A stretch of DNA of 64,000 bases from Selaginella moellendorffii (lineage: Eukaryota; Plantae; Lycopodiophyta): positions 3,171,710 through 3,235,709 of the forward strand of contig NW_003314264.1 in assembly GCF_000143415.4 (NCBI RefSeq), written 5' to 3'. Shown here one piece after another: positions 41,220 to 52,000 of this stretch. The first letter of the stretch is position 1. Each line of letters opens with the position of its first letter. The position numbers were made by a program, and so were the translations under genes. Below the pieces are notes generated by a model, which was given only the letters and a program-made list of their open reading frames with translations, was not told the DNA's origin and did no database searches.

Positions 41220-43049
41220 ATGGGAGGCGATTTCTCCAAGCCGGATCCTCACTACGATAGCTACGACGCGTCGCCGTCTCCGCGCGTCCAGCCCACCTCT
41301 CCGCCGAAAGCTAAGATTCACCGCCGCTTCTCCACGAAGTACTCGCACATCGCCGATAATTTCGCTAGCATTGAGGAGGTATGATCGCCGAGAAGCAACG
41401 ATCTCATGGAAATTTTGCCTCACTGGAAGTGGAAATTTTTTGTTTTGGTCCTTCTCTCCATCCAGGTACAGCAAGAATTGCGAAGAACAGGCCTCGAGTC
41501 CTCCAATTTGATCGTTGGCATCGATTTCACCAAGAGCAACGAGTGGACTGGAAGGATCACTCATCAAGGGAAGAGTTTACACGCAATCGGCGATGGTAGC
41601 GTGCCAAATCCTTACGAGCAAGCGATTTCTATCATCGGGAAAACCCTCTCCGACTTTGATGACGACAACTTGATTCCTTGCTTTGGCTTTGGAGATGGTA
41701 CGAATGCTTTGTTTTTCTTTCACGAAAGCTCTCTACTTTGGACCGACTCGGCTCTCTCATTTTCCAGCATCCACGCACGACAACTACGTCTTTAGCTTCT
41801 ACTCGGATCACCGCCCCTGCCATGGTTTCGAGGAAGCTCTTGCAAGGTACCGTGCCATCGCTCCTCACGTCCGGCTCGCTGGTATGTTCCCACGAAGAAG
41901 AAGATCTTTCGAGTGAGTTGACATGGTCTGGCAATTTTTTCGCAGGACCGACTTCGTTTGCTCCCATAATCGAGGCTGCAGTAAGAATAGTGGAACAAAG
42001 CGGTGGTCAGTATCATGTTCTCGTGATCATTGCCGATGGCCAAGTAAGTGACTGCTTGTTTTTTTGTTTCCTAGGATCAAATGTGGGGCCGTAACTTATA
42101 CTAGCTCGTGTTTCTGCTTTTCCACAGGTAACAAGAAGCGTAGATACGGAGGTCGGGCAATTAAGTCCTCAAGAGAAGAGCACGATTGACGCGATTGTGA
42201 CTGCGAGGTACGCTTCGTTTTCTACTATTTTTCCTGTGCCTATGCCTTCCACTCTTTTGCAGCAACTATGCGCTGTCGATCGTTCTTGTTGGAGTTGGCG
42301 ATGGTCCTTGGGATATGATGAAAGAGTTTGACGACAACATCCCCAGACGAGCATTCGATAACTTCCAGGTACCCCAAACATTGACGTCAATTTGTCATGC
42401 TAAACTGTGCTCGTTTTGACAGTTCGTTAACTTCTCCCAAATCATGTCGAAGAAGCTGCCTCTCCATAAGAAAGAAGCATTGTTCGCATTATCAGCACTC
42501 ATGGAAATCCCAGCTCAGTACAAAGCAACGGTAGAACTTGAAATCTTGGGGTAAGATTGCTTCTTTAAAAGGATTTCCGTTCTTATTCGTCTTTAACTTC
42601 AGGCGAAGATCTGGAACTGCGACTAGTTCTCTTCCTTTGCCACCTCCTGTACAAGTATTGCAAGCGGACTCTCAGTTTCACGTTGAGCCATCGTCGTCTG
42701 GTTACTATCCTCCAGCTGAAAACTACTACACTCCACCTGGATTTTCACCTACGGCACCGAGGGGCGTGGACCTTCCAGAAAGCCAGGTACGTTTCACTGT
42801 TCCGGACAAACTCTTAAGATGAACGCTCTTGTTTTCCAGGTGTGCCCGATCTGTCTCACGGAGAGAAAGGACTTGGCTTTTGGCTGCGGGCACCAGGTAT
42901 GCAAACACCATTTCTTTGGTCTTTGGAAACTTGTCAAACGTGTTGTTTCCATTATGTCGTCATGGCAGACATGCAGGGAGTGTGGTGCCAGTTTGACGAA
43001 CTGTCCGATTTGCAGACAGGAGATTTCGACTCGAATTCGGCTGTACTGA
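41220..43049 (+). CDS. RGLG: RGLG-type E3 ligase (copine/vWA plus RING), multi-exon
   Basis: MGG N-myristoylation site, [41 protein letters not shown], terminal CPICL..CGHQ|TC..CPICR..RIRLY. Confidence 0.95.
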
Positions 43050-44413
43050 AAGACTGGAGCTGGGATTCGCGCGGCCGTTCGTGTACAGGCAAAGGATTTG
43101 TTTTTCGAGGGAGGTTCGTGGTTTGCTACAGTTTTGTCGCAAGGAATCGGCGACCAAGAGCTTTGACACTGGAATGATACCGCTGTAATTCTTTCTCGCG
43201 ACTCTCAGGGAGGGAATCTTCTCCCCGCAAATCGTTTCTTCCTTCTCTTTTGGTTTCTTTTCCTTCCGTCTTTGTTTTCAAAGGGGTCGTACTTTGTGAT
43301 GTTGACGCAGACTTTCGGATGATTCGAAACCATTTTTTCTCTTTTTTGCCACCCCTCTCTGTGTAGAAATTTTTTTTCCTTGGATTCCGTACTCCCCAGA
43401 GCCGGGACGTGCCCGGACCATCCATCAACCTTGGCACTTTAACATTGTCTTCGAATTTATCAAATAGAAACATGGTTAGATTATCCGTCACCTAACAGTG
43501 AGTGTTGAATGTTAGGTGGGTGTGGAGTGAAGCGAATTGGTAGCTCAACCGAGAGTTGCCTATGTCATCACGATTGGTGACCCTTAACTACTAGCTATAA
43601 TGCGAGCGAGTGCGCAAACTTTTTCTAAGATGGAGATGTTTAGCCTGTTAATCCTGAATGAGGGTCGTGAGTGAGATTTTTTATATAATGTAAGGTTCTT
43701 AGCGTTCCGCGGGGGCCGTGTTGGTCGGTCTATGAGCAAAGCCTCACGTAACCTAGTAGGATTTCAATTATCTCTTTCTTTTTCTTTTGTATTTTTGCAA
43801 CGAGCTTGACTTAAACGAGACTGGGATGTTTGAACTAGAAACTCGTATTAATATGCGTATTTAGAGTCAATCGTGTCCCAGATGTGTATAGTTAGTCTCG
43901 TCTACTCTCAAGATCCCTTGCATTGTGCACAGGGGCTTGAATGGAACGCACACAGGGCCGAGATCCAGTCGGGCCAAGGAAAAGGAAAAAGAAAGAGAGA
44001 AAAATGTGAATGCTGGAGTTTAGACTTCCACGGTGATCCTGTGACAAGGTTTTCCACTCGGTGACTTGGCAACCAAGTCAATGAGGCTCATCAAGGAAGG
44101 GCGGTGGCAGCATATTACCGACACACAACCACGGAAAAGGATAGATCTAAACCGAATCCCAGCGATTCCTCTTATAGATGCCAGCGTCTTTTCGCATGCG
44201 GTGACGAGAGGTTTTGGATCGCGGCGGGCACTTGCGACTTTGTGGACTAGATCGGCCATAAAAATTTGGGTGAAACTTGTGGATGGTCATCGTCAAGGAC
44301 ACGTAGAGAGGCACAAGCCCCGGGCCAGCAACACAGTGGTCAGGCTGTGCGGCCAAAGGGAAGCGTTGCTTGCATCCTCCACGTACGTAAACAAAGAAAA
44401 AAGAGAAAGGGAG

Positions 44414-44455
<42 letters not shown>

Positions 44456-45243
44456 GACCCCTCCTTTTGGAAGGAGGGGCCAGGGGGAGATAGGAGATAC
44501 AACCACAAGGGTCACAACTAGTGAATTGTTTGTTTTCTTGGGTGGCCGCACCAATGGTTTTTGGCCGGATGTGATCGTTGGCAATGCCAAAGGTGCCGTG
44601 TTGGAGGCAAACTGGCCTAGTAGCAAGGCCCAGCCACAACGTTTATCTCAAGGTTTGCCGATTTTGATTTTGCCGTGGACCCTTGCATCAAAAGCCACTA
44701 TATTATACTACGCAAGAATTATACGCCACATACATGCATATATTTTAAGGGCCGGGGATGTCTATGCCCGGGACACATGCCATGTGAGCCGGTAACGTAA
44801 CTATACGTAACCAGCCGTGTGTGGGAAACCACCGGTATGCCATGCTTGCCAAAACTTAACAGCAAGCAAACAAGGTAGGGTAAGTGGGGAAGGGACGGCT
44901 TAAATGCAGGCTGACTGTCCCCACCCACGCAGCTGCAAACCTGAGGTACCCAGTTTCTTCTTTTTTATTTTTAATGCCTTTTTTTACTCATTTTTCTTCC
45001 CCTTTTCTGTGGGTTTTACTATTGCTATTTACCATACCATGGTGGTAAGGCATGTGTTTGATCATGGTGAGCAGGCAATGTACTTGTGAGAGTGGTGTAG
45101 GTGCAGAAATGAACAAACAAGGCACACACACAAGTTCTGCACACACACACAAATCTTAAGAGGGGGTTTGCAGCACACACACTGGAGCAGCAGCAGACAC
45201 CAGCAGCACACAGCAAGGATGGAGATGAGGTGAATTGAATGTA

Positions 45244-45300
45244 ACACACACCACACCACACACCACACCATACCACACACCACACACCACACCACACACA
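45244..45300. repeat. CA-rich (CACAC/CCACA) low-complexity repeat
   Basis: Directly visible; nearby (GA)n at 44417-44452, (CAG)n at 45606-45634 and (CT)n at 45933-45968. Confidence 0.8.
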
Positions 45301-46070
45301 AACCTCTCTCCTTTTTTTTTCTCTCCCCCTGTCTTTCTAAAAGTGGGAGCAACTTAACCCAAGAGCCTACTACACCTCCCCCCCTCTCTCATTTTCTTCC
45401 CATTCATTTGATCTCCTAGTTTAATAGGAGGTAAAAAACTTTTTGTGGGAGCTTGGGGGGTTGGGGGTTTGGTGAATTGGTGGTGTTGGGAGCAGGAGAG
45501 AGCAAGCACCAGGTAGCACAGATCTGATCCATTCTGTAGCTTAATTGATCCAAAGGCTCCCTTGCTACAGTGTACTGTGCAACCAAGAATTCAGGGGAGA
45601 GAGCATCAGCAGCAGCAGCAGCAGCAGCAGCAGCATCAACAAGAACAAGAGTAGGGGAGAGAAAAAAAAAGATCTTTTAGACACCAAGTGAAAAGCAGAG
45701 CACCCCAAAACAAGGGAAGTGGGAAAAGGGAGAAAAGAGAAGCTGAGATATGGAAGAAGAGGGAACAAGAAGCAGGAACTGGCTATGGCTGTGGAGGGGA
45801 ATATTCGCGTCTCCCATCGTGGAGGAGGGAGAATGGAGGGCAAGGGAGGGGTAAGAGGAACCCAGGATTGGACTGGAGTTGGGCTAGGAGAGCTAGTTCT
45901 AGTTTGGTCTTCTCTTTTTTTTCCTGGATTCCCCTCTCTCTTCTCTCTCTCTCTCTCTCTCTCTCTCGCGTGGTGTGTGTGCGCATTGATTCAGGTGTAG
46001 GACTTTCTCGCTGATTGATGGTCCATGGAAGATCAAGCGCTACCGTGTTGATCGGGGTGGGAGGATCCCC

Positions 46071-48509
46071 ATGGCGGCATCCAGTGATTCGGAGAGTAAG
46101 AAGAGCAGGAAGGAGGAATTGGGGGGCGGTGGGAGCAGCAAGGAGGAGAAATCCGATACCGCGGCGGGCGGGTCAGATCAGGCCCAGCAGCAGCAGCAGC
46201 AGCAGCAGCAGCTGGCGGTGGTGCCATCGCCGGCCGCCGGCGGAGGCGGCACGGCCAATGGCGCGGGCGGTACCGCCGGCGGTACGCAGCCGGCGGCAGC
46301 ATCCTCCGCCGCGGCGGCTGCCAAGGAGCGCGACTACATCTGGACCGAGGACGCTGTGCACGTCCTCCTGGATCACTTCCTGGAGAAGTACATGAGCTAC
46401 GAGAAGGGGATGATCCGCAACGCCGACTGGGTGGAGATCGCGCAGCGCGTCAACCAGCAGCTGGAGGGGAACAAGCCCGTCAAGACGCCCGAGCAGTGCA
46501 AGAACAAGGTGGACAATCTCAAGAAGCAGTACCGCAAGGAGCGGCGGCGCGGATCCCTTGGCCCCTCCAGCACCAATTGGGCATTCTTCTCGCGGATGCA
46601 CGACATCTTCGAGAGCGATTACAAGAAAACAGGGGGTGGTGGCGGCGGTGGAGGTGGCGGCGGCGGCGGAGGAGGAGGAGACCGAGATCCTGGCGGCGCG
46701 AGCGAGGACGTACCACCGCAAAACAATTCCAATCCCGCCCCCGCCGCCGCCGCGGCTGCCAACAACATCGAGGACGCCCACCACCACCACCGCTTGCGAT
46801 CCGCGGTGGTGCCGGATCACTACCTGGCGTCGCGCGAGTTCATCCGCAAGCAGCAGGAGGAGCTGATGCAGTACAACAAGCGGCCATCGCGACGGAGCGA
46901 GACGCCGCCGCCGGGGTCTGGCGGCGCGCCGATCTCCCAGCAGCACCACCCACACCACCACCACCACCACCCCATGATGCTACTGCCCGAGTCCTCACAC
47001 ATGGCCTTCCCGCCGCACGCATCCAATCACCACCACCGCGAGTCCGGCAGCACGCCCGCGCGGAAAAAGGCCAAGTCGGACCGGCACGAGCAGCACGGCG
47101 TCCCGCACGGCATGACGCACGGCATACCGCAGCGGCACCACGACCAGCGGCACTTGCAGCCGGCGGGGCCGCCGCAGCACCACGCGGAGGGATCGGGGCC
47201 GCCGTCGTCGGACTCGGGCGGCGGGGGTGGTGGCGGTGGAGTGGCTGCCGTGGAGGGATCCACCAAGCACGAGCGGAAGCTCCACCGGCACCAGCTCGCG
47301 GCGCTGCGGCGCGACTTCATGGAGGGATTCACGGGCTTCGCGGAGGTGATGCTCAAGATCGAGGTGGCCAAGATGGAGATGCAGCGGGATCTGGAGCGGC
47401 AGCGGGCGGAGATGGAGCTCCACCGCACGCAGATGATGTTGAGCAACCAGCTCCAGCTCGCTAAGTACCTCAAGGCCAGCCCGATACCGCACGGCATGCC
47501 GCCCGACGGCGGCGGGGCGGGCCCCTTCTGGCCAAACTTCGGCTTCACCGACGCGAATGCCAATGCCGCCGGCGGTACCGGCGGCCCCGGCGGCACGACG
47601 CCGCGGCTCCAGCTCGCCATCCCGATCTTCCCGGACTTTACCGCGCTGGATGCCGTGGGGCCTTACGAGGTACTGCATTTGCTCCCCAACGTGGAGGTGC
47701 TGTTTGTGAGCCACCAGCCTGGGCTGTACGCCGCCGGCATGGGAATGCTCACGTTGCAAGCCACCGCGTCATTCGACCAAGTGACGCGGCCGCAAATCCT
47801 CGTCGTGCCCGGCGGTATGGGCACCCGGAGGCTGCTCCAAGACCGAGTTATACTCGACTGGATCCGAAAGGTACGTTTTCTTCTTTAATGGCTTGAGTGG
47901 AGACAACAAGTTTTTGTTGTTTGCTACTGATCAACTTGGCTGCTTCTGTCCTCGTTCCACTCGATGCCTACTAAAGTTTCGATTTTTTCGTTGCTTTTGG
48001 TGGTGGTTCTTCCAGGTTCACGAGCATACCCTCTACACTGCTTCCGTTTGCACTGGATCGCTGCTGCTCGGTGCTGCCGGATTGCTAAAAGGCATCGAGG
48101 CAACCACGCATTGGAACTCGCATGAGCTGCTAGCGGAATTTGGAGCCAAGCCAGTATCCTCGAGGATAGTCCGCCAGGTTGGTTTCAATCACCCGCGCTC
48201 CTGTATAACTGTTTGTTCTTCCAGGGGAAGATCATCACTGCTGCTGGAGTGTCCGCTGGGATCGACATGGCTCTTCAGCTGGCCGCTCTTCTAACGGACG
48301 AGGCCACCGCCAAGACGCTCCAACTTTTCATCGAGTATGATCCTCAGCCTCCGTTTGACAGCGGCTCGGTGGCCAAGGCCGGGCCCGAGGTGGTGAGCAG
48401 GGCCAAAGAACTGTCATCCAAGCGACTCCAAGCCGTGGCTGGTGCCAGTGCTGCTGCTGCCGCTGCCGCCGCCGCCGCCGCTGCTGCTACTTCCAGAGCT
48501 CCAGCGTGA
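46071..48509 (+). CDS. Trihelix (Myb/SANT-like, SIP1/ASIL type) transcription factor fused to a DJ-1/PfpI isocyanide-hydratase-like domain; 3 exons, ~748 aa
   Basis: Exons 46071-47870, 48016-48177 and 48225-48509, all GT-AG phase 0. Trihelix WTEDAVHVLL..W.EIA..KT.EQCKNKVDNLKKQYRKE..WAFF; coiled coil; DJ-1 domain TALDAVGPYEV, VVPGG, SVCTGSLLLGAAGLL..ATTHW, AGVSAGID, EYDPQPPFDSGS. Confidence 0.9.
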
Positions 48510-49087
48510 AGCAGAGAGAAGAAAAGTCTACTTGTTCTACGATGCTGCTGCTGCTGTTGTATGTACCAAAAGACGATAGAGGAGAGTGAGGGAGGGAGAC
48601 GAAGAGCTCTAGAATCGAGACGAGGAACGAGCTGCGAACGACTGGAATTTCCTTTTCGGAAGAGCTTTGGTCGGGGAGAGAGATGATCCAGTTTTCCAAG
48701 AACACACCCGGAGAAAGAGAGGCTCCACAGCTCGAGAGTTTCCATTGATCATTGGTACGCTGCTGGGGCTCTCGCTCTCTTTTCATCTCTTTCTTTGCTC
48801 CATCTCTTTTTCTTCCCGCGGGACTAACAGTTCTTCTCTGCTAGCTCTCTCAGCTCTCTAAATTTTTTGTTCGTTTTCTTTTTTTCTTGGGCTCTCGTTC
48901 ATACCGATTTGTGTACCGCTGCTGCTGCTGATTGATTGACATCACTGTGCGTTCGTTTTTTTTCCTTATATAAATTCTTGGTAGCCTCTGAGACGAATAA
49001 AGAAGAAAAGAACTTCCTTCCTCTGTGGCCGAATTTTGCCGCTAAAATTTGAAAGTTTAAATCTCTGTAGGGTTAGGGCACGAGGAG

Positions 49088-52000
49088 ATGGCGACGGGCG
49101 ATGGTGATGGCGATGGCGGTGGAAGCGACAACGCGAACGAGGTGGTGTAGGTTTTTCTTGCCCAATCTAGACACCTCGGACTGGGCGACGAGCTGGGAGG
49201 TGGTGATGGCTCCTCCGCAAGGCAGTGTGACAGCGGGTGATTTCTTGCCAAGGACAGGGCTTTGATTTCTCTTGCACCAAGACGGCAATGGTCACGAGAA
49301 ACTTGTGAGAGATCTCCTCTGGAGGGCAAGAAAGCGTAGCAAGCATGCAGGGAGCTAAGCCGGGGGGCCGCAAGGAGGTGGAAAGGGAGAGGCGGAAAAG
49401 CTTGGCGTTGGATAGAAGGAAGACCGCGGCCATTAATCAGGGAAGCACAAGTGGAGCCGTAAAGAATTTCGGTCACAGCAGTACGCTCACGCCACGGACT
49501 CTGGTGAAGCGATCCCACCACAAGGAGCACGTCTTGAATGTGAGCGGCCTTCTTTTTCTTCCGCGAAAGCTACCACAGTATACTTTTCTTCCATCGCTCG
49601 CAGCTTGTGGTGGTGGTAATGGCGGTTGCTTTTCTAGATCCTTGCCGAGAAGAACTTGAGGATCGGAGCCTTCGGGAAGGTTGAGACGCAGGAGGATCAG
49701 CCGGCATGGAAAGCTCGGCCCAACGCACAGCAAAGCCCGCAAGTTCTAAACTTGAAGAAGAGGATGGAGCAGAGGAAGAGGCATATGACGCAGTACACGA
49801 AGAACAACACATTTGTGGACATCTTCAAGGTGGTATTTTTTCTAGTTTTTCTTTCGATTTTTTTTTTGCTTTTGTTATGTCGTGTTTAGATTCCATGCCT
49901 TCTCTAATCAAAACTTTTACCGTTCAGGACACTGAGGACCGCCGAACACCGCCAGCGACGGCAGGAATTGTTGTTGCCGGTACAATCGAGCTGGTTGCTC
50001 GTCAGGTTATTGAGAAGCACGCTGAGATCCAACACAGGTAAGCAAGCGCACACCTAAACTTCCAGAGTTAGATTGATATGCCTCGCTGAGAGTTATCCAA
50101 CAGCGATGCGTGCTTGAGAGAAAGCGACCAAAACACATTTTTCTTCGTTTTTTTCTTTTTCTTGTATTTTTTATTTCTCTCTTTTTACGCTTGTGTGCGC
50201 TGTAGGTGAATGCAACTTGCATTGATGACTATCATCGTACTTGAGTGTGCAGAGAAAAGAAAGGAGTCTGGGCCCAATTAGGAAAGCCTTATGCGTGCTT
50301 TGGCTTACCAGCTTCGGCCATACCGAAGGACTGTCCAATGCCAGCCGGGGCTCCACCTGGTGAAATGTATCCTTTCTTTGGACACGCTCAGAAGCCGCAA
50401 CTGTTAGAAGTCGGACAAGACGTTACAAAGTTTAGAAGAAAGCGTGCTCAACCTGTCACACGGGAAAGCTTAAACATGCAGGGCATGCTGATAAAGCTGG
50501 GCCTGCAAGGTAGGACTACTGATACTACTCACCTTTGTCACCCGTTTGCCTGTGATCTGATCCTACAAATTCTTTTCCTGAGTGATTTGCATGTTTTGTA
50601 CAGACTAATGGACGGCGTTTGTTTTCATCAGCGTGTTCTCATATTTTCTGTAGGCAGTACAAAATTCCCAAGGGCACCTCTTGTCGAGGCAAATGACTTG
50701 AAGACGGCTGTGAAGTACGGTGGTGCTTGCTACACACTTGGGAGGTCCGTGCCTTCTTCAAAGCGTTCCAATTTTGACGGTATGTACTTCAGTGCCTGGC
50801 CTGCTTCTTTTTTCAGAACTTCTTCTTTGCAGGAAGAAGCAGGCTTTCCTTTGATCTAACTGAGCTGTTTGAAAGGTAAGATAATAGTATACATCTGGAT
50901 TGATGTGCTGTGGCTCCTAATTCTCAGTTGGCGGAGCATATCTGGTGGATCACAGGTATGGCCCTTTCATAGTTTTTTACATGACTTGTAGCTGACTCCG
51001 ACAAGGTCTATAGAGTGTTTTGGATATGGATTTTAGTAACGTGCCGCCGCCACGAATGCCTGGTGTGAGCTTGCCGCAGCTGGCGAAGTCACCAGCACCT
51101 CAACTTGAGCGTCCAAGCACCAGTGCTGGAGAACAGTCTTCGCATAGTCTGGTATTTTATTGTATGCTAAAGATCCCTGCGTCATAGATGTCGTCTTCCC
51201 TGCGCAGCTATATGGCTGGAAGAAAGGTTTTGCTGATACGAGGAAAAGGCTGCAAGACAAGCTTACACAGCGGCTAATGAATAGAACAGTTCGGCGAAGG
51301 CATTTTAGATCGTGTTCCCCTTCTACAGCAGAGGTATCCTGTTTGTTTTATTGACAATGCCGAAGTAGTTTCTCCTTTTGAAGATTTCGATCAAGCTTTT
51401 GGAACACTTAGAGGAACGGGGTGGTGGTTCTAAAACTCCACTACAGACAGGACACATCTGGTCAGCATCACTCTCAGAGAGATCTGATTCCTGACAAATC
51501 AGGTGGCAATGCAGGAAGGGTGTCGAAGATAAACAGAGAGAGATGGACGCGTCGGCTGTAGATCCGGAAGTGGAAGCTATCAGCAAGTTCTACGAGCGTG
51601 TGTGCATGTTTGTCAACAACCAGAAGATGGATGATCCACTTATGGACATGCTTGTCAGCCATCTTAAAGAGTAAGTTCGCTGTTTGATTGGGATTATTTT
51701 TCTTGTCCCTGTGTTTTATTCTAGACTGTTGGAAGAAGGCTACAAGCTGCAAAAGAATCTACTCATAGCTCTCTGCGAACGCTTGTCGAAGTTACAAGGT
51801 ACTTTGTGCTTGGTCGGGTTTAACTTCTGTTCTTTTTCTTTCCAGATCACGTCGAGGCTACCGGGAGAATGACATGCTTGATGCCTATTCTCAACTTCAT
51901 CTGCAAGGAGCTTCACCTCACGTCCGTGGAATTCAACTCCATTCTTGGCAGATTTGGCCTGGATTGGTACAACACTTTCACCAGGCCATCTCTCTCGGTG

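What the first reader, a model, noticed from the sequence alone, without database searches (positions are those of the whole stretch)
46071..48509. Plant trihelix transcription factor fused to a bacterial-type isocyanide-hydratase-like DJ-1/PfpI domain: candidate one-component sensor-regulator
Seen: one ORF carries a trihelix DNA-binding domain (from 46341), a His/Gly-rich linker with RKKAK (NLS-like), and the SIP1/ASIL-type coiled coil (~47320-47470). A full DJ-1/PfpI domain follows from 47607. The junction lies inside exon 1 with no stop or intron, so it is not an artefact of my splice model. Known: SIP1-clade trihelix proteins normally end soon after the coiled coil. In bacteria, related DJ-1-like domains act as effector-sensing modules of AraC regulators (GlxA/FtrA type). 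Inference: a ligand-, electrophile- or redox-responsive TF, built convergently from a plant DNA-binding module and a microbial enzyme. I know of no description of this architecture.
Basis: partly seen in the sequence, partly recalled or inferred. Interest (0 to 1): 0.92.

Follow-up and report, generated by a model that had tools for sequence, protein, structure and literature searches.

The report
Trihelix regulator fused to isocyanide hydratase
A spikemoss (Selaginella moellendorffii) gene that is transcribed and evolutionarily conserved joins a complete plant DNA-binding regulator to a complete, apparently active isocyanide-hydratase-type enzyme. I found this combination in no other organism or paper, so it may link a small-molecule reaction directly to gene control, but that link is untested.

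Summary
A three-exon gene (46071-48509, + strand, 748 aa) encodes a SIP1/ASIL2-type trihelix domain, a disordered His/Gly-rich stretch, the clade's long C-terminal helix, a ~43-residue flexible linker and a full isocyanide-hydratase (ICH)-type DJ-1/PfpI domain.

- **Transcription:** RNA-derived contigs from four studies lack both introns exactly. Single contigs run from the trihelix region through the junction to the 3' end.
- **Selection:** all 9 coding variants seen in those contigs are synonymous.
- **Enzyme half:** it keeps Cys612, Asp527, Thr613 and 68 of 70 family-conserved positions.

The enzyme half is not a recent microbial import. Both of its introns sit at the same places in liverwort, moss and clubmoss genes, and it falls inside a land-plant clade. 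So the gene is a lineage-limited fusion of two old plant genes, which lie on different chromosomes in Diphasiastrum.

No protein with both domains appeared among 1.84 billion representatives or in the papers searched. The sensor-regulator function is plausible but untested. This scan had already reported the same architecture on another piece of this genome, probably the other haplotype.

The parts
46071..47870 (+). Exon 1 (codons 1-600): trihelix domain, disordered linker, long helix, junction linker and the first 88 residues of the ICH-type domain
   Evidence: ORF; GT donor at 47871; RNA contigs continuous to 47868/47870 and then spliced
46341..46607 (+). Trihelix (Myb_DNA-bind_4) DNA-binding domain, aa 91-179, followed by a fourth helix at aa 173-181
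   Evidence: Pfam E 6.4e-16. W91, W120 and W170 are invariant in alignment A1. AlphaFold2 helices 93-109, 117-130, 140-159 and 173-181 have pLDDT 84-95. GT-1 DNA-binding domain 2jmw gives TM 0.62 by target, at a weak E-value
46626..47264 (+). Low-complexity Gly/His/Pro-rich region (aa 186-398), modelled as mostly disordered, with one helix at aa 249-269 and RKKAK at aa 331-335 (nt 47061-47075)
   Evidence: Composition and motifs; pLDDT below 50 apart from aa 249-269. Related proteins have no counterpart of most of it. Three synonymous variants lie in it
47265..47477 (+). Long C-terminal helix of the SIP1/ASIL clade (aa 399-469), a probable dimerising coiled coil
   Evidence: One continuous helix with pLDDT 90-97. 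It is conserved with P0007, Diphasiastrum, Amborella ASIL2 and Vitis ENAP2. tblastn of P0007 gives 62% identity here
47478..47606 (+). Junction linker (aa 470-512), Gly/Pro/Ala-rich, with no stop and no intron. It lies where related trihelix proteins carry their last few residues and stop codon
   Evidence: pLDDT below 50; RNA contigs continuous across it in four runs
47607..48437 (+). Isocyanide-hydratase-type DJ-1/PfpI domain (aa 513 to about 725), split by the two introns
   Evidence: Collinear with PDB 3NON/6NI5 chain residues 5-229. 68 of 70 family-conserved positions are kept. It falls inside the land-plant clade
47649..47651 (+). Asp527, the counterpart of ICH Asp17 (general acid/base)
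   Evidence: Alignment; 100% conserved column; role of Asp17 from PMC12570138
48049..48054 (+). Cys612-Thr613, the counterparts of ICH Cys101 (nucleophile) and Thr102
   Evidence: Alignment; Cys column 100% conserved; role of Cys101 from PMC12570138
47871..48015 (+). Intron 1 (145 nt, GT..AG, phase 0, after ..DWIRK)
   Evidence: Skipped in contigs of all 4 runs. An intron lies at the same place in Diphasiastrum, Marchantia and Sphagnum ICH-like genes
48016..48177 (+). Exon 2 (codons 601-654), carrying the nucleophile elbow
48178..48224 (+). Intron 2 (47 nt, GT..AG, phase 0, after ..IVRQ)
   Evidence: Skipped in contigs of 3 runs. An intron lies at the same place in the three other plants
48225..48509 (+). 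Exon 3 coding part (codons 655-748 plus TGA): C-terminal third of the ICH-type domain and a poly-Ala tail
48510..49034 (+). 3' untranslated region, as far as the longest contig reaches
   Evidence: X5 record 14 runs from 48221 to 49034 on the same contig as the coding exons
44800..46070 (+). Transcribed upstream stretch with a 104-nt GT..AG intron (44944-45047). It is either a long 5' untranslated region of this gene or a separate transcript; undecided
   Evidence: Contig pieces at 44800-45594, 45679-45927 and from 45986 on; the joint 44943/45048 is seen in X13

Best explanation
This is a real, transcribed and selectively maintained gene of Selaginella moellendorffii.

Shown or directly supported:
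- It arose when an intronless SIP1/ASIL2-type trihelix gene lost its stop codon and became joined in frame to the first exon of an old land-plant gene for an isocyanide-hydratase (ICH)-type DJ-1/PfpI enzyme.
- The 748-aa product has four parts in order. The first is a trihelix DNA-binding domain. The second is the clade's roughly 70-residue helix, which probably dimerises. The third is a flexible linker of about 43 residues. The last is a complete ICH-type domain that keeps the catalytic Cys, Asp and Thr and nearly every family-conserved position.

Inferred:
- The protein works as a dimeric nuclear DNA- or chromatin-binding factor that carries a catalytically competent cysteine enzyme.
- The chemical state of Cys612 alters the enzyme dimer and so the activity of the attached regulator. 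That state could be a covalent thioimidate with an isocyanide, another electrophile adduct, or oxidation. In ICH such a state is known to shift a helix at the dimer interface. The outcome would be a one-component sensor-regulator.

My odds: real fusion gene about 0.9; both halves functional about 0.75; regulatory coupling about 0.3.
For: - Gene model and domains.
- RNA: both introns are removed exactly, and single contigs of 1.6-2.7 kb run trihelix, helix, junction, exon 2, exon 3 in runs from four studies.
- Selection: 9 of 9 coding variants in those contigs are synonymous. They are spread over trihelix, linker, helix and enzyme parts. P is about 2e-5 under neutrality.
- Enzyme half: 68 of 70 positions that are at least 95% conserved in 120 ICH-like proteins are kept, including D527, C612 and T613.
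- Trihelix half: the closest relatives (P0007, Diphasiastrum 07G089000, ASIL2/ENAP2-named proteins) share the trihelix and the long helix and stop 10-60 residues after it. The model gives a confident trihelix and a 70-residue helix.
- Origin: the introns are shared with three other land plants, and the domain sits in a plant clade with aLRT 99. The Diphasiastrum orthologues lie on different chromosomes, and no partner lies within 6-10 kb in the loci examined.
- Analogy: FtrA and GbdR sensor domains are the nearest curated bacterial families.
- ICH biochemistry: ICH is a dimer whose Cys101/Asp17 chemistry moves helix H and the Ile152 loop (PMC12570138).
Against: - Contigs are assemblies of short reads and do not prove single full-length molecules. 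No start or end mapping and no protein evidence was available.
- The fusion protein was absent from both protein collections searched, so I could not see how public annotation models this locus.
- The fusion is so far seen in one species only (two copies in the assembly).
- Nothing tested here shows DNA binding, nuclear location, enzyme activity or any coupling between the halves.
- Full conservation of the enzyme domain fits a plain enzyme just as well.
- Other notes of this scan (unchecked) report stand-alone ICH-like genes in the same genome.
Confidence: 0.6

Rival explanations
1. The fusion is real but there is no regulatory coupling. The enzyme half simply works as an isocyanide- or electrophile-detoxifying enzyme, or as an extra dimerisation module, tethered to a trihelix protein. 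This would be a lineage-specific 'Rosetta stone' fusion kept because each half is useful.
For: The enzyme domain shows ordinary family-level conservation (68 of 70 positions). Its branch length is ordinary in the tree (0.3, against 0.42-0.46 for the branches leading to the neighbouring plant groups). The two structured halves are separated by a roughly 43-residue linker modelled as disordered, which does not suggest tight allosteric contact. The two genes are unlinked in Diphasiastrum.
Against: All 9 variants are synonymous, including those in the linkers. This suggests the whole reading frame, not just the two domains, is maintained. Related DJ-1-type domains have repeatedly been recruited as sensor modules of bacterial regulators.
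Confidence: 0.3
2. The locus mainly yields separate products. An internal start (for example translation from Met476, 37 codons before the enzyme domain) or early termination would give a stand-alone enzyme and/or a stand-alone trihelix protein. The full fusion protein would then be minor or absent.
For: Contigs cannot show transcript ends or molecule continuity. An in-frame Met lies at aa 476. Stand-alone forms of both genes are the rule in other plants.
Against: There is no stop codon between the helix and the enzyme domain, so a trihelix-only mRNA would lack a stop. No loose ends or joints were reported between 47478 and 47606 in four runs; the loose ends at 47218-47247 lie in the low-complexity region. 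Synonymous-only variation extends through the linker.
Confidence: 0.08
3. A recent bacterial gene was transferred into Selaginella next to a trihelix gene.
For: Bacterial and metagenomic proteins are about 60% identical to the plant ones. The family is bacterial in type.
Against: Both introns lie at the same places in Diphasiastrum, Marchantia and Sphagnum genes. The Selaginella domain sits inside a 27-row clade (aLRT 99) that holds all labelled plant sequences and is apart from 95 bacterial or metagenomic rows. Any transfer therefore predates the split of these land-plant lineages.
Confidence: 0.03
4. Assembly or gene-model artefact: two genes wrongly joined in the genome assembly.
For: None found. 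The only point in its favour is that the protein is missing from the protein collections searched.
Against: Independent RNA-derived contigs from four studies reproduce the junction with at most a few synonymous differences. A second copy on another piece of the assembly has the same architecture, according to scan note s1-382078, which I did not re-examine.
Confidence: 0.02

Closest known systems
SIP1-clade trihelix factors (ASIL1/ASIL2, ENAP1/ENAP2, FIP2-like)
   Same: Both have a Myb_DNA-bind_4 trihelix with three conserved Trp, a fourth helix and the long conserved C-terminal helix. The nearest named relatives carry these names.
   Different: Those proteins are about 300-400 aa long and end shortly after the helix. 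This one has a roughly 210-residue low-complexity insert and continues into a whole enzyme domain.
Isocyanide hydratase (ICH/InhA) of Pseudomonas, PDB 3NON/6NI5, and fungal XanA
   Same: Homology covers the full length. The Cys101, Asp17 and Thr102 counterparts are present, and the C-terminal extension beyond the Pfam DJ-1 core is kept. In Aspergillus the ICH homologue XanA sits in a cluster with an isocyanide synthase and a pathway regulator (PMC5974471).
   Different: The known enzymes are stand-alone proteins of about 230 aa. The plant and nearest bacterial subgroup has TAAGVSxGIDM where Pseudomonas has TGGGITAGIDF (the Gly150/Ile152 loop). The substrate of the plant proteins is unknown.
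Bacterial AraC-type regulators with a DJ-1-like sensor domain (GlxA, FtrA, GbdR)
   Same: A DJ-1/PfpI-type domain and a DNA-binding domain lie in one polypeptide. FtrA and GbdR are the best curated matches of the plant ICH-like domain, though far below their cut-offs.
   Different: The domain order is reversed. The DNA-binding fold is unrelated (AraC helix-turn-helix against trihelix), and no PF12833 is present. This is an analogy, not membership.
Plant chloroplast RNase J (At5g63420), counted among trihelix genes
   Same: It is a precedent for a trihelix-type domain fused to an enzyme of bacterial type in plants. PMC4195496 lists At5g63420 among trihelix genes; that it is RNase J with a GT-1-like domain is my own knowledge.
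   Different: There the enzyme is N-terminal and acts on RNA in plastids, and the trihelix belongs to the GT-1-like group. It has no relation to DJ-1/PfpI.
Stand-alone land-plant ICH-like proteins (Marchantia 'cyclohexyl-isocyanide hydratase', Sphagnum, Ceratodon, Riccia, Diphasiastrum)
   Same: They are 60-70% identical, share the two intron positions and fall in the same clade.
   Different: They are 210-240 aa long (Ceratodon M758_11G004800 is 337 aa), and none has a trihelix domain.

Membership tests
Trihelix transcription factors, SIP1/ASIL clade | Myb_DNA-bind_4 (trihelix) domain above Pfam's threshold | tested here: met
   59 bits against a cut-off of 27, E 6.4e-16, aa 91-179
Trihelix transcription factors, SIP1/ASIL clade | Three regularly spaced conserved tryptophans, one per helix | tested here: met
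   W91, W120 and W170 are invariant in alignment A1. They fall at or in the three modelled helices
Trihelix transcription factors, SIP1/ASIL clade | Fourth helix just after the trihelix, and a long conserved C-terminal helix | tested here: met
   Helices 173-181 and 399-469, the latter with pLDDT 90-97. The FAEVMLKIE..AKME..ER.RAEMEL..T motif is shared with ASIL2/ENAP2-named proteins
Trihelix transcription factors, SIP1/ASIL clade | Protein ends shortly after the C-terminal helix (usual architecture) | tested here: not met
   Related proteins stop 10-60 residues after the helix. This protein runs on for 279 residues into an enzyme domain
Trihelix transcription factors, SIP1/ASIL clade | Sequence-specific binding to GT-type DNA elements; nuclear location | not testable with these tools
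   Only basic clusters were seen (RKKAK at 331-335, KRPSRR at 270-275)
Trihelix transcription factors, SIP1/ASIL clade | Three-helix Myb-like fold as in Arabidopsis GT-1 | tested here: inconclusive
   Foldseek hit to 2jmw with TM 0.62 by target and rmsd 2.3 over 66 columns, but E 0.9 because the 510-residue model is mostly disordered
Isocyanide hydratase subgroup of DJ-1/PfpI | Full-length collinear homology to solved ICH, including the C-terminal extension | tested here: met
   Exon pieces match chain residues 5-91, 98-145 and 147-229 of the 231-residue chain, with E 2.5e-12, 6.1e-16 and 1.4e-13
Isocyanide hydratase subgroup of DJ-1/PfpI | Nucleophilic Cys (Cys101) at the elbow, followed by Thr | tested here: met
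   SVCTGS with C612 and T613 aligned to the chain's C and T. The Cys column is 100% conserved
Isocyanide hydratase subgroup of DJ-1/PfpI | Asp17 general acid/base | tested here: met
   D527 in TALDAVGP is aligned to the chain's Asp. The column is 100% conserved. Role of Asp17 from PMC12570138
Isocyanide hydratase subgroup of DJ-1/PfpI | Gly150/Ile152 loop as in the Pseudomonas enzyme | tested here: inconclusive
   The sequence is A661 and V663 (TAAGVSAGID). These residues are nearly invariant in the plant and nearest bacterial subgroup but differ from Pseudomonas TGGGITAGID
Isocyanide hydratase subgroup of DJ-1/PfpI | Hydration of isocyanides to N-formamides | not testable with these tools
   Needs an enzyme assay. 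The name 'cyclohexyl-isocyanide hydratase' on the Marchantia relative is an annotation only
Bacterial GlxA/FtrA-type AraC regulators | N-terminal DJ-1-like domain followed by an AraC-type helix-turn-helix (PF12833) | tested here: not met
   No PF12833 or PF00165 hit, and the domain order is reversed. The FtrA model scores 30.8 bits on exon 2, and 71 bits on the Sphagnum-like relative, against a cut-off of 425

The most novel reading that the evidence does not exclude
The fusion protein is a one-component isocyanide sensor tied to an isocyanide metabolism of Selaginella's own. Other notes of this scan, which I did not check, report a large expressed family of fungal Dit1-type isocyanide synthase genes in the same genome. 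In Aspergillus, an isocyanide synthase, an ICH homologue and a pathway regulator form one cluster (PMC5974471). Here the hydratase and the regulator would be one polypeptide. Covalent capture of an isocyanide at Cys612 would shift the enzyme dimer and switch the trihelix half. That switch would control synthesis of, or protection against, these compounds.
Probability: 0.12. Interest if true: 0.85.

Novelty: new variant of a known kind. Interest (0 to 1): 0.62.

Why it matters
Plant transcription factors that carry a complete, apparently active enzyme domain in the same polypeptide are rare. They are direct candidates for sensing a small molecule without a separate receptor.

This gene offers a compact, testable case. 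Both parts are well understood. The trihelix family is a known DNA-binding family, and ICH is one of the best-studied cysteine enzymes, with known ligand-driven motions. The fusion point is clean, and unfused orthologues exist in related plants for comparison.

The work also shows that ICH-type genes are old residents of spore-bearing land plants (liverworts, mosses, lycophytes). I found no paper on this in the library searched. It raises the question of what isocyanides mean to these plants.

Tried and rejected
- **Trihelix word search:** the word-index search with the trihelix region found nothing. I take this as a limit of the index, because the exhaustive search found hundreds of trihelix relatives.
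- **Own-genome fusion protein:** it never appeared in the protein collections. I therefore could not check how public annotation models it or look up its cluster.
- **Species of P0007:** this is the closest trihelix relative (308 aa, unfused, from run SRR2103708). Its species could not be identified, and no paper cites the run. It cannot tell us whether other Selaginella species lack the fusion.
- **Diphasiastrum P0009:** it was not on record as a gene, so I used its longer isoform P0160.
- **Tree:** the careful search did not finish in the time allowed. The quick IQ-TREE result is reported, with SH-aLRT support only and midpoint rooting.
- **Promoter and terminator scan:** the sigma-70 patterns found nothing at the junction, but they are irrelevant for a plant.
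- **Foldseek:** the 510-residue model gave no significant match, only weak Myb/GT-1-like hits.
- **ESM Atlas:** it gave only ASIL2/FIP2 trihelix clusters, none with a DJ-1 family.
- **Scan findings by sequence:** blank.
- **Structure of the full protein:** I did not fold the spliced full-length protein or its enzyme domain. The spliced sequence has no reference, and I did not type it in.
- **Rejected explanations:** recent horizontal transfer, because of the shared introns and the plant clade; misassembly, because of the RNA contigs from four studies.
Full report
**What is there**

The ORF list shows one open frame of 605 codons at 46071-47888 on the + strand, in an unusually G+C-rich stretch: 65% against about 50% around it. 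Reading the DNA and translating the joined exons gives a three-exon gene.

| Part | Coordinates | Size |
|---|---|---|
| Exon 1 | 46071-47870 | 600 codons |
| Intron 1 | 47871-48015 | 145 nt, GT..AG |
| Exon 2 | 48016-48177 | 54 codons |
| Intron 2 | 48178-48224 | 47 nt, GT..AG |
| Exon 3 | 48225-48509 | 94 codons plus TGA |

The product is 748 aa.

- **Trihelix domain.** Pfam places Myb_DNA-bind_4 at aa 91-179 (E 6.4e-16).
- **Enzyme domain.** Each of the three exon pieces matches Pseudomonas isocyanide hydratase (ICH, PDB 3NON/6NI5). The matches are collinear over practically the whole 231-residue chain: residues 5-91, 98-145 and 147-229 (E 2.5e-12, 6.1e-16, 1.4e-13).
- **Model of aa 1-510.** An AlphaFold2 model shows a confident trihelix with a fourth helix (aa 93-181, pLDDT 84-95) and one short helix (249-269). 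It also shows a single helix of about 70 residues (399-469, pLDDT 90-97). Everything else is disordered, including the junction linker 470-512.

**Is the fusion transcribed?**

Notes of this scan identify the genome as Selaginella moellendorffii. This fits the 47-nt intron. I laid contigs of four public runs from four studies on 44800-49800.

- The runs are listed only as 'RNA?'. Their contigs skip intron 1 exactly in all four runs and intron 2 in three, so they derive from spliced RNA.
- Single contigs cover the trihelix region, linker, helix, junction and later exons. X5 record 14 (2651 nt) and X6 record 18 (2110 nt) reach exon 3. X1 record 3 (2069 nt) and X13 record 9 (1555 nt) reach exon 2.
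- The only gap (46630-46798) is a masked Gly-codon repeat. The contig coordinates run on across it with a 3-nt length difference.
- No joint or loose end falls between 47478 and 47606.

Contigs cannot prove single molecules or show transcript ends. An additional internal start therefore remains possible.

**Is it under selection?**

The contigs differ from the window at nine coding positions, at codons 2, 138, 274, 280, 355, 457, 464, 580 and 626. All nine are synonymous. Given the share of synonymous transitions and transversions in this coding sequence, the chance of that under neutrality is about 2e-5. The variants span both domains and the linkers.

In an alignment with 120 ICH-like proteins, 70 columns are at least 95% conserved. 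The Selaginella domain keeps 68 of them; the exceptions are T609A and V651I. Among the kept positions are D527, C612 and T613, the counterparts of ICH Asp17, Cys101 and Thr102. The roles of Cys101, Asp17 and the Ile152 loop, and the dimeric state, are described in PMC12570138.

**Where do the halves come from?**

*Trihelix half.*
- An exhaustive HMMER search of 1.84 billion representatives gave 1611 hits.
- The best is P0007: 308 aa, 50% identical, from a transcript contig with its own stop and 3' untranslated region and no enzyme sequence.
- Next is Diphasiastrum complanatum O6H91_07G089000 (303/334 aa).
- Other relatives are named ASIL2, ENAP2 or FIP2-like.
- All share the trihelix and the long helix and end 10-60 residues after it.
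- The Diphasiastrum gene is intronless, like the trihelix part here, and has no ICH-like sequence within 10 kb.

*Enzyme half.*
- Stand-alone proteins of 210-240 aa at 60-70% identity exist in Sphagnum, Ceratodon, Marchantia, Riccia and Diphasiastrum. The Marchantia protein is annotated 'cyclohexyl-isocyanide hydratase'.
- Mapping three of them on their genomic loci shows introns after ..W(I/L)(R/Q)K and after ..V(R/Q)(Q/E), the same two places as in the window. Several metagenomic or transcript fragments also run from ..DWIRK into junk.
- In a quick maximum-likelihood tree the Selaginella domain sits in a 27-row clade (aLRT 99). That clade holds every labelled plant sequence and is apart from 95 bacterial or metagenomic rows.

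The enzyme gene was therefore already present, with its introns, before liverworts, mosses and lycophytes diverged. The fusion itself joined two resident plant genes. In Diphasiastrum these lie on different chromosomes: 07 against 01 and 15.

**Is the architecture known?**

- None of the 150 best hits of the exhaustive search matches both domains. A true fusion relative would have outranked all of them.
- A length-restricted search with the enzyme N-terminus found only the 337-aa Ceratodon protein and bacterial proteins.
- Full-text searches for trihelix with DJ-1 or PfpI, and for isocyanide hydratase with Selaginella or plants, found nothing relevant.
- The trihelix family survey that includes Selaginella does not mention the architecture (PMC4195496).
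- The collections evidently lack other Selaginella species, and even this protein. The age of the fusion within the genus is therefore unknown.
- This scan had already reported the same architecture on another piece of this genome: note s1-382078, 2421 letters against 2439 here, most likely the other haplotype. My results on this copy agree with that report.

**How it probably works**

*Shown:* an intact DNA-binding-type half and an intact enzyme-type half lie in one maintained reading frame, joined by a flexible linker.

*Inferred:* the long helix and the ICH-type domain (ICH is a dimer) would both favour a dimer.
- The sensor reading draws on three things:
  - bacteria repeatedly use this DJ-1 subtype as the sensor domain of AraC regulators, and FtrA and GbdR are its nearest curated families;
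  - ICH's ligand-driven helix and loop motions at the dimer interface;
  - the whole-frame constraint.
- Against it, a disordered linker of about 43 residues is a weak allosteric connection. The enzyme domain also shows no sign of change from the stand-alone form.
- I give coupling about 0.3, a plain tethered enzyme about 0.3, and mainly separate products about 0.1 or less.

*A lead I could not test:* other notes of this scan report stand-alone ICH-like genes and a large family of fungal Dit1-type isocyanide synthase genes in the same genome. In Aspergillus fumigatus, an isocyanide synthase, an ICH homologue and a pathway regulator are clustered (PMC5974471). If Selaginella makes isocyanides, a regulator carrying an isocyanide hydratase would be an obvious candidate sensor.

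**Verdict**

The architecture is undescribed, but it is a lineage-limited fusion of two known plant gene families and its function is untested. I class it as a new variant of a known kind: a regulator fused to a small-molecule-handling domain. Interest 0.62.

Noticed in passing
window 41400-43050 (+): The upstream neighbour is a multi-exon gene with Copine (E 3e-12 and 5e-11) and C-terminal RING finger pieces. This is the architecture of RGLG-type E3 ubiquitin ligases.
   Followed up: partly
window 44800-45927 (+): A transcribed stretch lies upstream of the start codon. It has a 104-nt GT..AG intron (44944-45047) and several CT/GA microsatellites (masked at 45242-45336, 45595-45678, 45928-45985). 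It has no convincing ORF. It may be a 5' untranslated region of more than 1.2 kb for the fusion gene, or a separate non-coding transcript.
   Followed up: no
proteins P0002, P0004, P0005, P0006 (high-G+C metagenome contigs): In these bacterial gene calls, a GlxA-type regulator (DJ-1-like domain plus AraC helix-turn-helix) runs on into a second, ICH-like domain with an intact SVCTGS motif. So the closest bacterial ICH-like genes lie directly after, or fused to, a DJ-1/AraC regulator. Some of the joins may be frameshifted gene calls.
   Followed up: no
L003 3179-4350 and 6001-7085 (Marchantia polymorpha); Diphasiastrum 01G045200/01G045300: ICH-like genes occur as tandem pairs in Marchantia and Diphasiastrum. 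Sphagnum jensenii (L004) has an extra intron, after ..SFDQV.
   Followed up: partly
window 46630-46798 and 48440-48490: The Gly-codon and Ala-codon repeats inside the coding sequence vary in length between the window and the RNA contigs; there is a 3-nt difference across 46630-46798. X5 and X6 contigs carry a 7-nt deletion and a cluster of changes in the 3' untranslated region (48633-48657). This fits expression of a second allele or copy.
   Followed up: no
window 49075-49800: A separate transcribed unit lies downstream, with contigs in all four runs and a 98-nt GT..AG joint at 49540-49637 in one run. No protein family was identified.
   Followed up: no
whole gene 46071-48509: The fusion protein, or any near-identical fragment, is absent from both large protein collections. 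Yet proteins of other plants' ICH and trihelix genes are present. Public gene models for this locus may be missing or very different.
   Followed up: partly
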